NCBI RefSeq assembly: GCF_003704095.1
Contig: NW_020844647.1
Coordinates: forward strand, 124,001-188,000
Length of the DNA stretch: 64,000 nt
Direction: 5' to 3'
Origin: Pocillopora damicornis
Taxonomy: Eukaryota
A model generated the notes under the pieces. The model was given only the letters and a program-made list of their open reading frames with translations. It had not been told where the DNA came from and did not search any database. Shown here one piece after another: positions 1-64,000 of the stretch (position 1 is its first letter; the number at the start of each line of letters is the position of its first letter). Position numbers and translations under genes: made by a program.

Positions 1-594
1 TCTTTTCTATCATCCCAGCAGACGTCACTAAATAAGGGTTCTCAGGTTGTGCATATGGCATTCCATCGACCCAGGGCATTCGCACATGCAAAGGGCGATA
101 ATCGATCTTGCCATCGTTGATTATCTGCCAGACGATTTCCTGAGTCCAAGTTGTTCCTATTAATGATAAAAAAAAAAACACTTCAATGGGTAATTTTTCC
201 CTGCAGGTATGATTATAATGGTGCATCAAGCAAGCTCGGGCACCGGCCAGGCGAAGGGTAATAGAGAGGAAGTGAGTACGATTCTTTTCGATCCCCTCCT
301 CCTCATAGAATTTTGATAAAACAGTAGCTTACGGAAGGAGCGGGGAAGCTTACGAGATTAGAACCGGCGAGAGGTCAGTGATGGGTCTGGCACTAAAAAT
401 GATAATTACGAGTGAAACGAGTAAGCATCTTACAAACCTGATCTTGGAAATGTACAAACAAAGATGTCTTCTTTCTTGGGAATTAGCTTCGGAAATGTGT
501 CCAACATTTCCTTGGTAGTGCCTTTTACCCAGACTTTTCCATCAATCACAGCGTCATTACTTGGCCCTATGGTGCTGTCTTCTGACATGGACAT
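1..594 (-). CDS. Cytosolic sulfotransferase (SULT1-like), first two coding exons; gene runs off the window
   Basis: Exons 594-438 and 156-1 with GT/AG ends and matching phase 1 give MSMSEDSTIG...EDIFVCTFPRS/GTTWTQEIVWQIINDGKID...RMPWVDG. TFPRSGTTW is the 5'-PAPS-binding loop of sulfotransferases. An acceptor near 607 implies an upstream non-coding exon. Confidence 0.88.
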
Positions 595-57800: not shown

Positions 57801-59017
57801 GCCTCGAGTTGGAACACTCGAAAAACGAGCGTGAAACGGAAATTATAGATACAAATTCTGATGCGTTTATACGATCAGGAGCCGTTTCTTTCGTTTCCTA
57901 AGGAAATTTTTGAGTTTTCCATGCCTAACGAAAAGAAAAAATAACAACAATAACGATAATACCATAGACCAGTTCATAAATGATCAATATTTCTAATTAC
58001 GTCAAACAACTCTTTGCGGTTTTTCAGTGCCTCATAATTGAAAACGATTGGATCGTCACGAGACAAGAAAATGAAGACCGCGAGATTTGAACTGAATTGC
58101 TTAAGATTGATTCGAATTTGTCATCATTTCAGGCTCATGATTTGGTCATGATCAACACGTGCACGGCTTCCAGGGGAGGGAACAATTTTACAAAACGGAA
58201 ACAGTTTTCGTGAATTTTGAAATTTCTACTTGAGTTAATGAAACGAAATTAGGGTCTCTCAAACAATAAAACATGGAAACCGTTATATCCCGATGCCTGT
58301 GGTTAAATGGCTCGCTATGCCCTCTGCAACGCTTCAAACTGCATTTCAAACGTAACTTTCTCTTCAAAGACAGGGGTATTAGTGCAGTTGAACCTCGTTT
58401 AACTCGAACTTCCAAGCGAGACAAAAAATGGTTCGGGTCAGCGAGGATTCGAGTGAGGTGATAGTATTAAAATAAATGAAAAATGTTTCAAGGGGAAAAT
58501 GATCTTGTTTGAGAGTTTACGAGTTCGAGGTTAGATGACCATTTGGAGGTTTTATATGACGTACGACGCTAAAGCTGCTGATATACCGACGGCGCATCCC
58601 AACGCTGAGTTTTTGTTGCCTTGCTTACAAGTTTGAAGTGCTCCAAAGGCGGGATTTTAGAATGGAAGGTTAGATTTATTCTACTTTCGTTTATTGTTTG
58701 CTTAAAAGAAAGGAAAAAGAAAACAGTACTTCAATTTTTTTTTCGAAAATTTAGAGCTGAGTACGTTAGTTCTTTGTATTTTGTTAAAGCTAATTGTCTT
58801 TGTTTTCGAAGAACTTTTGATTTTGACCACGTGCTGTTCGTACGAGCTCGCAAATATCTGGAAGAAAGACGTAAATTTGTTCTTGCTTACTATAAACCTA
58901 TAATTATATAATTCTGAAGCATTCTCTCCTTTAAAGCAGCATTAAAGGAAACTAAGGTACTCTCTTACTCAATCATAATTGCTTGTTTTCGATTGTCTTT
59001 TGTTGTTCATTGTGTAG

Positions 59018-59763
59018 GTGACACTGTCTACCGACCCACTCAGAGTTCTGAAACCTATTCGGCTACTTATTGGTACGCAATGACGCAAAACTTGGTGAAG
59101 TCCTCAGAAGACTTCACTATACACTCCATACATGAAGATGAAGTCCGTCACAACTGTTCTATATGCAAAAAATCGTTCAAATGCAAATCTGAACTGATGC
59201 GGCATCATCGTGCCCACACGGGCATTCGACCGTTTATGTGTAATCTATGCTATAAAAGCTTTAACTACAATAGTGCACTCCTGGAACATTTGCGTGTGCA
59301 TTCTGGAGAAAAACCATACCAATGCAGTGAGTGCAAAAAGTGTTTTAGACAAGGGTCAACTCTCAACAGACACAAAAGGATACATACAGGAGAAAAACCA
59401 CATCAATGTGAAGTCTGTGGCAAGTGTTTTTCTGAGAAGAAAGGCCGCGATGTTCACAAAAGGACCCACACCTGTAAACAACCATTTTATTGTTCCAAAT
59501 GCCATCAGTATTTTATGCGCAGGGCATCTCTGCTCAGACATATTAAGAAAAATCATCTTATTATGGAGTCCAACCCAGGCTGTTTAGATGATGAGGCCAA
59601 AAAAATTCAGAGACATGAAAGCACAGCACCACAAGCTGGATCTACAGAGGTAGTAGTTAAAGTGGAGAGACCAGATATTGAGGAAACGAGTCTTGAGATG
59701 CTGATAAAGGATAGTGACCTTTTGAATGATTTGAATTACCTCAAGGAGGAGGTTGTAAACTGA
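59018..59763 (+). CDS. C2H2 zinc-finger protein with 5 tandem fingers
   Basis: Five CxxC-x12-HxxxH units with linkers TGIRPF, SGEKPY, TGEKPH and TCKQPF. Acceptor AG at 59016-59017; first ATG at 59080; AATAAA at 60019. Confidence 0.92.
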
Positions 59764-61040
59764 TTTGAACAGAACTTTTTAGCTTTCTCCCTTGTTTCAG
59801 AGAGACATGAAAAACTGTTAGCACTTTGATTTGATTCTGACAGGTGAATAATGTGGTCTGACCTACGAGTGTCCAAGAATTTCTGTGGGACAACTGCAAA
59901 GCAACATAGCACGATGTTAATCTTAAGTTTAATTGCAGGCAGAATTGGAGAACTCAAATTCTGCCACCAATTAATCAAACTCTGAATATAAAATAACCTT
60001 CAGTGGAACAACTTCATAAATAAAAACAAAGAAGTTGAGTGTATTTTCAATGAGACCTCAAAGTCTGTTTCCATCATTTGAACAGTATTTACTAATTATC
60101 ATTGAATACCATAGCTTAATATATGTTATGATCACCATGTTATGAACATTATTATATTTACGTAACTTTGTATTTATAAAGTATTTAATGTAATTCTTTA
60201 TCTTGTTGTCTTTCCATTCATTTTCATATTTCTAGATTAACCTTGCTAGCCTTCTAGGGAATCCTAGCTTGGGAATCCTCTTCCTGTTATGAGGTTCTCT
60301 TCAGTTAAACAAACATACTTATATATAGATTTATATGTTTTTAACTGAAAACTATCCAAAAAATAAACTCTCTTACATGTACACCACAAAACAAAAATGC
60401 ATCTGTCCAATTGCTCCTCATGGTGTGTACATTGCACTATTTGTGCTCTTTCATGCATCCGATAACCATTCATGTGTGCACATTTTTTTTTTCAGTTTTG
60501 ATCAATCATGATCAATTTTGTGCTGATTCTAAAATTACTTCCAGTCTTGCCATCAGAGAGATGGAAATTTTAATGTGATGTTTTATATGGAAGAAAAATG
60601 CCAAAGGGAAGAGCAGGCAAGAAGGCCCTCATTAGTAGATCTTCAGCACGAGCGTTTTCTAACCTGCGGGAAAGTAAGACACTATATGCGATTTGAGTCA
60701 GTGGGAGGTCTGTAAGGGGTCTGGCAATCACTATTGGCAAATTCCTCCCAACTCGTCTCAAATCCTCCCGCTGACGGAGAAACGCGCCACCAACAGTACT
60801 AAAAGTGAAGGCCTGGTCTGCGCTAAAGCAAAGAGATTCAACGAAAAAGGAACGATAATACCACGGAATTGTGAAGTTTGACGTAGACTGAAGACAGTGA
60901 ACTTGGAAAATCTTGGCTAAACTATTTAAGGTTAAAAAAACCTCTCTCCAGCTCCTTTCAGATAATCACACGTATTGTCAGTAACATAGAGATCAGTCTT
61001 TTGAGCATATTTCAGAATTCAAATGCTTTACTTGTGAATT

Positions 61041-63119
61041 TCAACCGTGTAAAAATACGATAAACAAATAAGTAGATAAATAGATAAATAACAAAGTGAT
61101 CGCCGGAAGTTTCAATTCTCTGAACACGAGAGAGGGCCGTTTGAAATAAAGCACTTGATTGCCGGCAAATTTGCCTTTAAGAAGCTGTAATCTCGCCCGT
61201 TTCTTATCATATTTGACGCGAATGGGCTTGAAATAAAGCGGACCTCGTGTGTTTCTCGATACAATTTTGGGAGGACTGTTCCCAATGTTTACGTAACCCT
61301 TAAGTTTTGATTCTAGTTTAGAGGAAGGACCAGGTATGGCGACTCCACCGTAGCCTGAAATCTGTAAACAGAGAGGAGTAAATGGTAAAGTGTGAGTTAA
61401 CTAATAACCTCTTTTTGGCGGATTCTGTCGCGCGATTGATAGAGGATAAAAAATATCGATTTAAGCGCGCCGCGCGGAACTATTGGAATGAGGCGCATGA
61501 AAAAATATCGTTTTTCCTCGAATAAGTGCCCACTCTCGAAAAAGCGTCCTTCCCCCGAATAAGCACCCACCCCTTAGGGCCAAAATGTTAATTAAGCACT
61601 ACACCCAATGAAGCGCCCCACCCCCTCCCTCACTGTCTCAAATTAGAAGGGATAAGAAAAAGCCAATTTCTATTGCTAATTAATCTATAACTTTTAAACC
61701 TTCGACTATTGCCGAATCAGTAGAGGAGAACAGTTTCTTTTCTGATCCAGTTATTTCTATCTCCATGCGCTTTCAGAGTTCCTCTGTGTGTGTAATCTGT
61801 CCTTTTAATTTTTGTCCAATAGATGCGCTCATAACAAGTGCTTCCTATTTGAAAGGTGAAATTTTTTACGCGCGTTTGGGAATATGAATAAATCTTGCAA
61901 TAGAGTCCAGTGAGCATGCGCAACGCCTTAATATGGAAAAGCCTATTTTCTTCCCCAGAGTTGTTGTTTCTATTAGTCACGTGGTCGGAGAAACGACGGT
62001 GTGGCTCTAAGGACGGCAATACTAAGTAACTTGTTATCAATACCTCTTGACTTATTTTGCCTCCCAGATGAAATTTTTCGCTGTAAATCACGCTGTAAAT
62101 AAGATGTAATTCCTCATCCTCCAGACGAGCCATCTTTCTTTTGTCAAGCTCAGTTTCCTGCAGTATATAGTCCAGATCTGGATCTTTGAAATATTCTTGG
62201 TCTAATTTCCCCAGCTCCAGTTCTCCCATATCATAGTGAATCTTGACATTACCCTCCACCATGGCTGTTATGAATCCAATGTCTATCCAGCTAAGTGACA
62301 GAAGCAAATGACGTCGTCTTTCGGGCATCATGAATTAATACAGGGGAGATTTTAAGCGATACACCACTCACAGTGTGAGCTGTTGACTTTGGAGTCCCTC
62401 AGGTTTGTTTGTGGTTGCGTGGCGATAAATTTATCTGACCCCCGCTAAGGCTCTGTAAAATTCTTATTACCCCCTCCCCCTCACTGGCAGCCAATTGCCA
62501 GTCAATTTTTTATAGTCCTCCCTTTATACTCTGTTGTTAGTGACGACTATTCCCCTTTCCGTTCCCCCTGAAAAATTTGTGACCCGCCCTCCAAAATCCT
62601 CCACACTCCCCCACCCCCCTCTGGCGATAAATAATGGCTGGTCTCCTTCAGTTCCCCCCTGCTTAGTGAGAGGTTATAAATGGGGAAAGGGAGGTGAGCC
62701 ATTGGAGTTCAAATCTTTAAATACATATAAACAGCAAAACTCTGTGGATCATATAAGCAAGTTAAAAAGTATTACCTTTCCAGAGCTAACAGACGATCTT
62801 TTAAAGTTCTCTTGCAATCCACTTCATCCTTATTCTCGACTTTTTCACTAATTATCTCTAAGTTATTTTGTAGTCGTTTTCTTGAGTGAATAAGTTCCAA
62901 AAAATTTGTCCTTTTTTCCTCCTTTATATAACTCTCTAGTCCTGCAATAGTTATAAATTCCTTTTTGGCAAACAGCTGCTGAGATATCGGCCTCAGCCTC
63001 CGCTTCACCATGAGCACGAATGGTTTTACATCTGAAACAGTGTTTGGACCATGAAGTACGGGATAGTACGTGTAACCAAAATTCAACTTGGCAAATGTTT
63101 TAAGAATCTTCCTAATCAT
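61041..63119 (-). CDS. Gasdermin-like protein (pore-forming N-terminal domain), about 300 aa, 3 coding exons; 3' end uncertain
   Basis: Exons 63119-62776, 62290-62044 and 61361-61041 join in phase (2, 0) with GT-AG ends. By-eye correspondence to recalled GSDME/pejvakin N-domain blocks: MIRKILKTFAK~MFAKATRNFLR; DVKPFVLMVKRR~KLQLLSLVTKKK; ELGKLDQE~FGTLRKQE; LHLIYSVI~LCVLTQKI; LQLLKGKFAG~FCLLRGKQGG. Confidence 0.62.
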
Positions 63120-64000
63120 CTGAAAAAACAACAACATGTATGATAGATGAGAGTCACTCCATACCGAGTCTTGAGATTAAGAGCGGATTAGAAGCTGTTT
63201 TTGATTAAGCCTTTACACCCTAACATCAGTGGTTTGTGGTTTTGCAGCTTGTAAGAAGGCGAGGTAAAGAGAAAGTCTATCTCGTGAGATGTGGCACATC
63301 TAGCCAGAACTTATCCCAATTTCTATAACGTGAAGCAACAAGGAGTATTGTTATTTCCCCTTGATACAAGCTTCCCTGACAATTCATCAGTACCCAGTAC
63401 TCCTAAGTGGAGAAACCCGCCAGGACTCGAACCTAGACCTCTCGACCCGGAGCTCATCACGCCAATCGTTAGGCCACTCAACTTGTAAACAAGTGACTAT
63501 CTTAATGATGAACATGCAGCCGGTATCGAGATGAGAGCGTTTAAATGAAGCGTGACCAGATTTTAATTTGCAACATGAAACATGACTCAGCTTTAAAATG
63601 CTTCGGAAAATGTTTAAATCCCTCTTTGTTCGTTTAAAGATAAATTAACAATCACAAATTCCTGAAGTTCAATGAATTCGTTTGATTAGAATTCTTCGTT
63701 GTTTTAAATCTAGAGCGCTACCTCAACCTTCTTGTGTTGCCGACAGATATACGTCTCCGAGCTATGTAATTTTAAGATTTTGGTTCCTTGAAAAAATTGC
63801 TTCCCAATTAGTGGGTTCAATGCAAAAATATCACTGTGTCTCACACGACCGCGCAATCAGACTTTAGACCGCGGGAATCGTATCCAAAGAAAAACCAACC
63901 AATGTTTTTATTTCTCAGGAATCTTATCTTCCCTAGCTTCTGAACAATGTTCAAGTTCCGCTTTGTCAAAACTAAAACAATATCCCAACGCTTCAAGAGT

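What the first reader, a model, noticed from the sequence alone, without database searches (positions are those of the whole stretch)
61041..63119. Divergent gasdermin-like gene apparently lacking the C-terminal autoinhibitory domain
Seen: three phase-compatible exons, which the ORF track splits or misses, encode about 303 aa. Inference: motif order and spacing follow the gasdermin N-terminal domain from the first helix, through the basic LMVKRRLR segment and alternating beta-hairpin-like stretches (FITAMVEGNVKIHY; ISGYGGVAI...LKGYVNIG), to LQLLKGKFAG. After that only about 40 codons remain before a stop. The roughly 1 kb up to the convergent zinc-finger gene's polyA signal holds no convincing GSDM-C exons. 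Established: typical gasdermins, including coral GSDME, are autoinhibited by a C-domain removed by proteases, whereas Trichoplax GSDM and fungal RCD-1 are pore-domain-only and activate without cleavage. This may be a separate cnidarian pore-only gasdermin lineage (cell death, immunity or allorecognition) with unknown regulation.
Basis: partly seen in the sequence, partly recalled or inferred. Interest (0 to 1): 0.85.

Follow-up and report, generated by a model that had tools for sequence, protein, structure and literature searches.

The report
Truncated gasdermin-like gene in Pocillopora
This coral gene is real, transcribed and folds like the pore-forming half of a gasdermin, but it is a recent truncation of a two-domain gene from a hexacoral gasdermin-like family that I found described nowhere, not an old pore-only lineage.

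Summary
Three minus-strand exons (63119-62776, 62290-62044, 61361-61041) with GT/AG borders give 303 aa. This matches NCBI XP_027039730.1 of Pocillopora damicornis exactly. RNA contigs from three studies show both splices and none leaving exon 3.

Relatives occur only in Hexacorallia, all named 'uncharacterized'. They are about 400 aa, with an acidic Asp-rich linker and a conserved helical C domain of about 130 aa. P. damicornis has at least 10 loci, seven in one tandem cluster.

The window gene sits inside a 100/100-supported clade whose other members all carry the C domain. An 8-nt tandem repeat in the linker part of exon 3 leads into a stop 9 nt before the still recognisable old splice donor. 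Exons 4-6 are gone. It alone among the ten loci has lost the conserved WKRP loop.

So gasdermin-like and C-domain-less is supported; a separate pore-only lineage is not. Whether it still forms pores or is decaying is open. The scan's only earlier notes concern this same stretch.

The parts
62776..63121 (-). Exon 1 of the coding part. ATG at 63119-63117; residues 1-114 plus 2 nt of S115. It encodes helix alpha1, strand beta1, the beta1-beta2 loop and beta2. An acceptor AG lies at 63123-63122, directly before it.
   Evidence: Translation. RNA contigs end at 63121 and continue into an upstream 5'UTR exon, with an in-frame TAA three codons before the ATG.
62970..62993 (-). Codons 43-50, RPISQQLF: the degenerate beta1-beta2 loop. 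The family consensus here is R-x-(I/V/L)-W-K-R-P-(F/Y).
   Evidence: All 9 other P. damicornis paralogues and most orthologues keep WKRP; only this gene has lost it.
62814..62828 (-). DEVD|C, residues 98-102. It lies in a low-confidence acidic loop just before the first long beta-hairpin.
   Evidence: Sequence. pLDDT is below 50 for residues 93-112. The alignment is variable here. Whether it is cleaved was not tested.
62291..62775 (-). Intron 1 (GT..AG). It contains a dispersed repeat at about 62334-62603.
   Evidence: The joint 62290->62776 is seen in 3 RNA studies with 247 nt on the shorter side.
62044..62290 (-). Exon 2, residues 115(part)-197. This is the most conserved part: GELELGKLD...LHLIYSVIYSEKF. 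It covers the first hairpin and the core strands.
   Evidence: Translation. Many homologous exon fragments exist. dN/dS is 0.14 against the nearest relative.
61362..62043 (-). Intron 2 (GT..AG). Contigs that retain this intron also occur in RNA libraries.
   Evidence: The joint 61361->62044 is seen in 3 studies, though only 28 nt on the shorter side. Unspliced contigs cover 61334-62073.
61161..61361 (-). Exon 3, pore-domain part, residues 198-264. It holds the second hairpin and the last core strands, ending at ...LQLLKGKFAG.
   Evidence: Translation. Homology to every relative stops at about residue 265-270.
61044..61160 (-). Exon 3 tail, residues 265-303. The first half is a diverged remnant of the ancestral acidic linker (FKRPSL..R....ITLL against FEMPSL.R....IMLL in the relative). 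The second half is a hydrophobic stretch.
   Evidence: Protein and DNA alignments with relatives. The model confidence here is low.
61053..61090 (.). An 8-nt tandem repeat, 4.6 copies, AAATAGAT on the + strand. It encodes residues of about 288-300 (LFIYLSTYLFIVF). This segment is absent from the nearest non-Pocillopora orthologue.
   Evidence: Tandem Repeats Finder; DNA alignment A5.
61041..61043 (-). TGA stop codon.
   Evidence: Translation. The same stop is present in P. verrucosa and in another Pocillopora contig.
61024..61031 (-). Vestigial exon-3 splice donor, GTAAAGCA, 9 nt after the stop. It is identical to the working donor of the six-exon orthologue.
   Evidence: DNA alignment A5. RNA contigs cross it unspliced.

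Best explanation
The locus is LOC113668047 of Pocillopora damicornis. It is a transcribed, correctly spliced gene whose first ~264 residues adopt the gasdermin pore-forming (N-domain) fold. It belongs to a gasdermin-like family found so far only in Hexacorallia, which Pfam does not detect and which I found described in no paper. Normal members have six coding exons. Exons 1-3 encode the pore domain plus an acidic, Asp-rich linker. Exons 4-6 encode a conserved helical C domain of about 130 aa.

Shown: in the Pocillopora lineage an 8-nt tandem repeat sits in the linker-coding end of exon 3. The frame runs into a TGA 9 nt before the old donor, and exons 4-6 are no longer present. The product is therefore a free pore domain with a 39-residue tail made of degenerate linker and translated repeat.

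Inferred: ordinary family members work like canonical gasdermins, with the C domain holding the pore domain inactive until a protease, probably a caspase, cuts the linker. A free, fully active pore domain should kill the cell that makes it. This gene is nevertheless expressed, and it alone has lost the family's invariant aromatic-basic WKRP loop. That loop is topologically equivalent to the gasdermin beta1-beta2 membrane anchor and C-domain contact. I therefore think the protein is most likely an attenuated or inactive remnant: tolerated, young, and either drifting toward a pseudogene or kept at low activity. I do not think it is a constitutive killer.
For: - **Gene model and expression:**. 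Both joints appear in three studies; no joint leaves exon 3; contigs run unspliced across 61031.
- **Sequence level:** the family profile's two best PDB sequences are bacterial gasdermins, E about 0.08. The PADLOC bGSDM model hits 18 of 21 members, best E 2e-5; for this protein it is the only hit, at E 0.016.
- **Family architecture:**
- **Secondary truncation:** the tree, the DNA alignment with the conserved donor, the tandem repeat, the negative C-domain profile search over the window, and the same arrangement in the chromosome-level P. verrucosa assembly.
- **Attenuation or relaxation:** WKRP is lost only in this gene. Its end branch is 0.54 against 0.26 and 0.21 for its sisters. Between two Pocillopora species the tail has 2 nonsynonymous and 0 synonymous differences, and exon divergence is about equal to intron divergence.
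Against: - The pore domain is otherwise well kept. It retains 36 of 41 strongly conserved family positions, as many as C-domain-bearing members do.
- The ORF and all splice sites are intact in every Pocillopora sequence seen.
- Pairwise dN/dS against the nearest orthologue is 0.36, and 0.14 for exon 2. Within Pocillopora the pore domain shows 3 synonymous and 2 nonsynonymous differences. The counts are too small to decide, but they are compatible with continuing constraint.
- Pore-only gasdermins that are held inactive by other means do exist (TrichoGSDM, RCD-1). Loss of the C domain therefore does not by itself imply loss of function.
- The equivalence of the WKRP loop to the gasdermin beta1-beta2 anchor rests on topology in a predicted model and on my recollection of the GSDMD and GSDMA3 structures, not on a residue-level superposition.
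- No Pfam gasdermin model matches.
Confidence: 0.55

Rival explanations
1. Functional pore-only gasdermin. The free pore domain is translated and kept latent by something other than a C domain, such as tight transcriptional or translational control, a partner protein, redox or lipid modification, or the 39-residue tail acting like the short inhibitory C-terminal peptide of bacterial gasdermins. On a signal it forms pores, serving immunity, bleaching-related cell death or allorecognition.
For: The ORF is intact, spliced and expressed in at least 3 studies. It keeps 36 of 41 conserved positions. dN/dS is 0.36. The predicted hairpins have alternating hydrophobic and polar residues, for example VKIHYDMGELEL. 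Other copies without detectable C-domain exons exist in the same genome, and short annotated relatives exist elsewhere. One structural alignment to an inactive bacterial gasdermin (7n52) spans model residues 8-286, which reaches into the tail.
Against: The tail is a translated 8-nt repeat plus degenerate linker. It is modelled with low confidence and carries both tail differences between Pocillopora species as amino-acid changes. The one invariant loop motif of the family is lost only here. The branch is twice as long as its sisters.
Confidence: 0.28
2. Modulator of its full-length paralogues. The free, anchor-deficient pore domain co-assembles with cleaved paralogue N domains, or binds their C domains. 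This would either poison pore growth (dominant negative) or titrate autoinhibition.
For: Six loci with C-domain exons coexist in the genome. The oligomer-forming core is conserved while the membrane-anchor loop is not.
Against: This is purely inferential. Identity to the paralogues is only about 30-40%, so mixed assembly is doubtful.
Confidence: 0.1
3. The gene is complete, and the C domain is encoded by exons that were missed, either further downstream, beyond the zinc-finger gene, or lost in an assembly error.
For: A donor-like GTAAAGCA survives 9 nt after the stop. An older annotation (P0003) ends open at ...GNQ and is marked partial.
Against: The stop codon comes before that donor. RNA contigs of three studies cross it unspliced, and no joint leaves exon 3. 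The C-domain profile has no hit in 61 kb downstream. The independent chromosome-level P. verrucosa assembly has the same stop, with the zinc-finger gene 1.3 kb downstream. A third Pocillopora contig agrees. Transcript-sized Logan contigs of 1.0-2.5 kb are on record as encoding the same 303 aa; I did not inspect them.
Confidence: 0.03
4. It is not a gasdermin relative at all. The structural match would then be convergence, or an artefact of AlphaFold placing a beta-rich orphan protein into a learned pore shape.
For: No Pfam gasdermin hit. hhalign against the two detectable exons of the species' own canonical GSDME finds nothing. Sequence identity to solved gasdermins is 8-15%. Both long hairpins are modelled with only moderate confidence.
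Against: Two independent models (mine and the ESM Atlas's) and two aligners agree, covering nearly the whole domain, with a clear gap to unrelated chains. A second family member gives the same result. Two independent sequence profiles point to bacterial gasdermins as the only or top match. The domain order of pore domain, acidic linker and helical domain in relatives mirrors that of gasdermins.
Confidence: 0.04

Closest known systems
TrichoGSDM (Trichoplax adhaerens gasdermin; PDB 8jyw pore, 8jyv crystal)
   Different: Sequence identity is only 8-12%. TrichoGSDM belongs to an old pore-only type, activated (from the literature, Li et al. 2024, cited in PMC13475620) without proteolysis. The coral gene is a recent truncation of a two-domain gene. 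Its regulation is unknown. It has a single cysteine, C102.
Coral/cnidarian GSDME (Jiang et al. 2020; 'GSDMin' of PMC9355259)
   Same: Same phylum and same fold. The two-domain relatives of the window gene share its plan of pore domain, Asp-rich linker and helical C domain.
   Different: It is a different locus and family. PF04598 hits only C3447:188.5-191 kb in this genome, not this gene or its paralogues. There is no detectable sequence similarity. The C domain of the new family is much shorter, about 130 aa. The window gene has no linker site and no C domain.
Bacterial gasdermins (bGSDM; PDB 8sl0, 7n51, 7n52, 9a84)
   Different: In bGSDMs the short C-terminal peptide is a dedicated inhibitory element removed by an adjacent protease (established knowledge). 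Here the tail is degenerate linker plus translated repeat, and there is no associated protease gene.
Fungal RCD-1 / HET-Q1 gasdermin-like proteins
   Different: The structural match is much weaker than to animal gasdermins. There is no evidence here of allelic partner variants or heteromeric activation.
Caspase-3-inactivated GSDMD (cleavage at D87 inside the pore domain)
   Same: DEVD(98-101)|C lies in the flexible loop just before the first membrane hairpin. This is roughly where, by my recollection, caspase-3 cuts and inactivates GSDMD.
   Different: This is positional analogy only. The loop is acidic and variable across the family, so the motif may be chance. Cleavage was not tested.

Membership tests
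Gasdermin superfamily (pore-forming N-domain fold) | The GSDM-N fold: an N-terminal helix, a twisted beta-sheet core and two regions that extend into membrane hairpins. | tested here: met
Gasdermin superfamily (pore-forming N-domain fold) | A match to the curated sequence models Pfam PF04598 Gasdermin or PF26164 Bact_GSDM. | tested here: not met
   No hit for the exons, the full protein or any of 38 relatives, even at E up to 10.
Gasdermin superfamily (pore-forming N-domain fold) | Any sequence-profile similarity to known gasdermins. | tested here: inconclusive
   PADLOC bGSDM gives E 0.016 for this protein, as its only hit, and matches 18 of 21 relatives, best 2e-5. The family profile's top two PDB sequences are bGSDMs at E about 0.08. 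hhalign against the canonical GSDME exons is negative.
Gasdermin superfamily (pore-forming N-domain fold) | An aromatic/basic beta1-beta2 loop used for membrane insertion and C-domain contact. | tested here: not met
   The family has (I/V/L)WKRP(F/Y). The window gene has ISQQLF and is the only one of 10 loci in the genome without the motif. The equivalence to the GSDMD loop is inferred from topology.
Gasdermin superfamily (pore-forming N-domain fold) | Oligomerises into membrane pores and binds acidic lipids. | not testable with these tools
This needs liposome or cell assays.
Canonical two-domain, protease-activated gasdermins (GSDMA-E, coral GSDME) | A C-terminal autoinhibitory domain. | tested here: not met
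   It is absent from the protein and from 61 kb downstream. Relatives have a helical C domain of about 130 aa. Some alignments to full-length GSDMD and GSDMB run into it (model 1..383 and 1..397), but with rmsd 6-13 A, so its homology to GSDM-C is inconclusive.
Canonical two-domain, protease-activated gasdermins (GSDMA-E, coral GSDME) | An interdomain linker with a protease (caspase) site. | tested here: not met
   In relatives exon 3 ends in an acidic stretch such as ..TTLAFEDEDSD|L. In the window gene this is replaced by a hydrophobic tail. Cleavage of the relatives' linkers was not tested.
Ancient pore-domain-only gasdermins (TrichoGSDM, RCD-1) | A pore domain without a C domain as the ancestral state of the lineage. 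| tested here: not met
   The tree places the gene inside a 100/100 clade whose other four members all have the C domain. The vestigial donor and the repeat insertion show secondary loss.
Ancient pore-domain-only gasdermins (TrichoGSDM, RCD-1) | Cleavage-independent activation, by a redox switch or a heteromeric partner. | not testable with these tools
   The protein has only one cysteine (C102). No partner is known.

The most novel reading that the evidence does not exclude
Hexacorals carry a second gasdermin family that Pfam cannot see. It is expanded in tandem arrays, with at least 10 loci in P. damicornis, and in one case is fused to HEPN_DZIP3 and TRADD-N immune modules. Pocillopora has fixed a natural C-domain-less member that is still translated and acts as a latent or low-activity pore former, or as a modulator of its paralogues. 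That would be a cleavage-independent gasdermin arisen within the last few million years from a cleavage-dependent one.
Probability: 0.3. Interest if true: 0.8.

Novelty: new variant of a known kind. Interest (0 to 1): 0.62.

Why it matters
Work on cnidarian pyroptosis, in the papers I could search, knows a single GSDME-type gasdermin per species, found by BLAST or Pfam (PMC9355259, PMC11508797, PMC11251625, PMC13475620). This locus exposes a second gasdermin-fold family in stony corals and sea anemones. It has many tandem copies, its own short C domain and an Asp-rich linker. That enlarges the candidate cell-death machinery relevant to coral disease and bleaching.

The window gene is also a natural experiment. 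It is a recently freed pore domain that is still expressed and differs from its kin mainly in one invariant loop. Comparing it with its full-length paralogues would test directly how autoinhibition and membrane anchoring co-evolve in gasdermins. If it proves to be only a decaying copy, the family-level finding remains.

Tried and rejected
- **Pfam.** Searched exon by exon, on the whole protein and on 38 relatives; no gasdermin model matched. There were only sub-threshold GST_C_3 hits on the relatives' helical C domain.
- **PDB by single sequence.** Nothing.
- **hhalign, family profile against the two detectable exons of the species' canonical GSDME.** Probability below 2%. This is a low-power test because the target is a single sequence. 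I could not obtain a canonical cnidarian GSDME alignment, because the length window of the search for homologous proteins excludes full-length GSDME when only exon ORFs can be referenced.
- **ESM Atlas on the relatives' C domain alone.** No usable hit.
- **Selection tests.** P. damicornis and P. verrucosa differ at only 7 coding sites, so there is no power. Pairwise dN/dS to the nearest orthologue averages over both branches.
- **Dating the truncation.** The Tara metagenome scaffolds L014-L018 hold only a lone exon-2-like relic next to a reverse transcriptase. L019 is another Pocillopora. No pocilloporid outgroup orthologue was found.
- **Homo-oligomer prediction of residues 1-266.** No verdict.
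- **P0087.** A bacterial adhesin, a spurious hit.
- **P0066.** The tail ORF read through TGA by metagenome gene callers; not a real longer product.
- **ARAGORN.** No tRNA in 60000-64000.
- **Literature.** No paper mentions this gene's identifiers or a second cnidarian gasdermin family. The library lacks many subscription papers.
Full report
**1. Observation**

The gene lies on the minus strand. Reading the sequence and translating it gives three exons:
- Exon 1: 63119-62776, 114 codons plus 2 nt.
- Exon 2: 62290-62044, 1 nt plus 82 codons.
- Exon 3: 61361-61041, 106 codons plus TGA.

All borders are GT/AG and the phases are compatible.

The exon-2 search returned a public protein, P0002, that is identical to the spliced model. 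It is XP_027039730.1, 'uncharacterized protein LOC113668047 isoform X2 [Pocillopora damicornis]'. All whole-protein work used that database entry. P. verrucosa has a 303-aa orthologue, P0013.

In one script I concatenated exon translations of a relative (L020), with X at the junctions, solely as one row of a tree. It was sent to no search.

**2. Transcription and gene ends**

Logan RNA contigs from four runs of four studies were laid on 58000-63900.
- The joint 62290->62776 appears in three runs of three separate studies, with 247 nt on the shorter side.
- The joint 61361->62044 appears in the same three, though only 28 nt on the shorter side. Contigs that retain intron 2 also exist.
- At 63121 the contigs of three studies continue into other sequence. 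That sequence lies at about 64047 in window coordinates, just beyond the window end. It is a 5'UTR exon, with an in-frame TAA three codons before the ATG.
- No joint leaves exon 3. Contigs run unbroken from 61363 down through the 3'UTR into the convergent C2H2 zinc-finger gene (ORF 58993-59763).

Contigs cannot exclude rare isoforms. The chromosome-level P. verrucosa assembly and a third Pocillopora contig show the same stop and the same neighbour.

**3. What it is**

No Pfam family matches the exons, the protein or its relatives. Structure gives a clear answer.
- AlphaFold2 on a 38-sequence alignment gave pLDDT 72.6 and pTM 0.67.
- Foldseek's first 19 PDB matches are all gasdermins: GSDME, TrichoGSDM, GSDMA3, bacterial GSDM, GSDMD and GSDMB, with E from 1.5e-9 upward.
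- The ESM Atlas's own model points the same way.
- A second family member, Oculina P0152, behaves identically.

At sequence level the signal is weak but consistent. The family profile's two best PDB sequences are bacterial gasdermins (E about 0.08). The PADLOC bGSDM model hits 18 of 21 members (best E 2e-5). For this protein it is the only hit, at E 0.016.

The canonical coral GSDME is a separate locus, C3447:188.5-191 kb. It is the only place in this genome that PF04598 hits.

**4. The family**

An exhaustive phmmer search gave 138 hits. Full-length relatives are 380-411 aa, and every one stops aligning with the query at residue 265-270.
- They carry an acidic linker and a conserved helical C domain. 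Its motifs include KLxIIK..VL...REKRKERVKKYLxWFE...PLTxEDCxFL...IQGYAIVLKLIDDLSDEHWDEIEKAW.
- All named members are hexacorals: Pocillopora, Stylophora, Oculina, Desmophyllum, Montipora, Acropora and Nematostella. All are annotated 'uncharacterized'.
- The nearest orthologue outside Pocillopora, in a 1.19-Mb ENA coral contig (L020), has six coding exons. Exons 1-3 encode the pore domain plus linker, and exons 4-6 the C domain.
- In relatives exon 3 ends in ..ETTLAFEDEDSD|L just before the donor. I take this Asp-rich end as a candidate caspase site; that is inference.
- P. damicornis itself has at least ten loci. Seven form a tandem cluster on C1708:916-984 kb, four of them with C-domain exons and three without. 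One more lies on C325 and one on C3979, both with C-domain exons. The tenth is the window gene.
- One member, present in transcript-sized Logan contigs, is fused to HEPN_DZIP3 and TRADD-N-like domains. That fits a role in immunity or cell death.

**5. How the C domain was lost**

A maximum-likelihood tree of the pore domain places the window protein in a 100/100-supported clade. The other members are Oculina P0152, JGI P0154, Desmophyllum P0010 and the L020 relative, and all of them have the C domain.

The DNA alignment with L020 shows three things.
- The first half of the tail is diverged linker: FKRPSL..R...ITLL against FEMPSL.R...IMLL.
- A 38-nt AT-rich segment follows that is absent from the relative. 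Tandem Repeats Finder calls it an 8-nt repeat at 61053-61090. Translated, it gives the hydrophobic stretch LFIYLSTYLFIVF.
- The frame then runs into TGA (61043-61041), 9 nt before GTAAAGCA (61031-61024). That octamer is identical to the working exon-3 donor of the relative.

A profile of the C domain finds nothing in any frame of the whole window. The pore-only state is therefore a lineage-specific secondary truncation, not an old pore-only lineage.

**6. Functional state**

For retained function:
- The ORF and splice sites are intact in all Pocillopora sequences.
- 36 of 41 highly conserved pore-domain positions are kept, as many as in C-domain-bearing members.
- dN/dS against L020 is 0.36, and 0.14 in exon 2.
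- Expression with correct splicing is seen in several studies.

For relaxation:
- The end branch is 0.54, against 0.26 and 0.21 for its sisters.
- Between P. damicornis and P. verrucosa, exon divergence is about the same as intron divergence. The tail carries 2 nonsynonymous and 0 synonymous changes. There are only 7 coding differences, so this has no statistical power.
- The tail originates from a repeat.
- Most telling, the motif (I/V/L)WKRP(F/Y/R) in the loop between the first two strands is kept by all nine other paralogues of this genome and by most orthologues. It reads ISQQLF only here, and ISKQLF in other Pocillopora.

By topology that loop corresponds to the gasdermin beta1-beta2 loop. 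In GSDMD and GSDMA3 this loop both anchors the pore domain in the membrane and contacts the C domain. That comparison rests on established structures recalled from memory, not on a residue-level superposition.

A fully active free pore domain should be lethal to the cell making it. My preferred reading is therefore an attenuated, tolerated, young remnant. A latent functional pore former (probability about 0.28) or a modulator of paralogues (about 0.1) cannot be excluded.

**7. Comparison with the known**

- Structurally the protein is closest to TrichoGSDM and GSDME.
- By sequence profile it is closest to bacterial gasdermins.
- By architecture its relatives resemble protease-activated two-domain gasdermins, but with a much shorter C domain. 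The homology of that domain to GSDM-C is unresolved.
- The papers I could search describe only the GSDME-type gene in cnidarians. None mentions this gene.

**8. Verdict**

Interest is moderate to high for the family, and uncertain for the truncated gene itself.

Noticed in passing
G000:C1708:916000-984000 (loci L021-L024, L027-L030); also C325:168400-171500 and C3979:130100-134100: A tandem cluster of seven paralogues of the gasdermin-like family, all on the minus strand. Four have C-domain exons. Three (at about 918.6-916.2, 979.1-975.7 and 983.2-979.9 kb) have none detectable, and one of these has a degenerate exon 2. Two further complete copies lie on other contigs. All of them keep the WKRP loop.
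   Followed up: partly
protein P0037 (852 aa, Logan transcript contigs): A family member fused N-terminally to a DZIP3-like HEPN domain (E 8e-42) and a TRADD-like N domain (27.4 bits, above the cut-off). These modules are typical of invertebrate immune and cell-death signalling proteins. Isoforms of 438-439 aa without the extension sit in the same cluster.
   Followed up: partly
window 62814-62828 (-): DEVD|C (residues 98-102), noted earlier by the scan. It lies in a disordered acidic loop before the first hairpin. The loop is variable across the family, so the motif may be chance. Its position resembles the inactivating caspase-3 site of GSDMD. C102 is the protein's only cysteine.
   Followed up: partly
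window 58993-59763 (+), with a splice 58666->59016: A convergent C2H2 zinc-finger gene whose 3'UTR overlaps or abuts that of the gasdermin-like gene. RNA contigs run continuously across both. The same neighbour is present in P. verrucosa (L013) and in another Pocillopora contig (L019).
   Followed up: partly
window 63380-63480 (-): A tRNA-like stretch with a B-box (GGTTCGAGTCC on the minus strand) inside the 5'UTR intron. ARAGORN calls no tRNA, so it is probably a tRNA-derived SINE. The adjacent 63122-63318 has very high summed contig depth in RNA libraries, as expected of a dispersed repeat.
   Followed up: partly
window 62334-62603 (intron 1): A C-rich dispersed element with many loose ends and odd non-canonical joints (62525->63204, 61771->63204) in RNA contigs. 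It is most likely a repeat shared with many other transcripts, not alternative splicing of this gene.
   Followed up: no
L014-L018 (Tara coral metagenome scaffolds), about 1420-1810: A solitary exon-2-like ORF, 64% identical to the window gene over the tblastn alignment (80% in the best local BLASTP match). It has no exon 1 or 3 nearby and lies beside a reverse-transcriptase ORF. It looks like a relic fragment in another coral genome.
   Followed up: partly
L020:557-610: Upstream of the six-exon orthologue lies another ...DLSDDQWEEIEKAWAEP exon, the last exon of a tandem neighbour. The family is therefore tandemly arrayed in that coral too.
   Followed up: no
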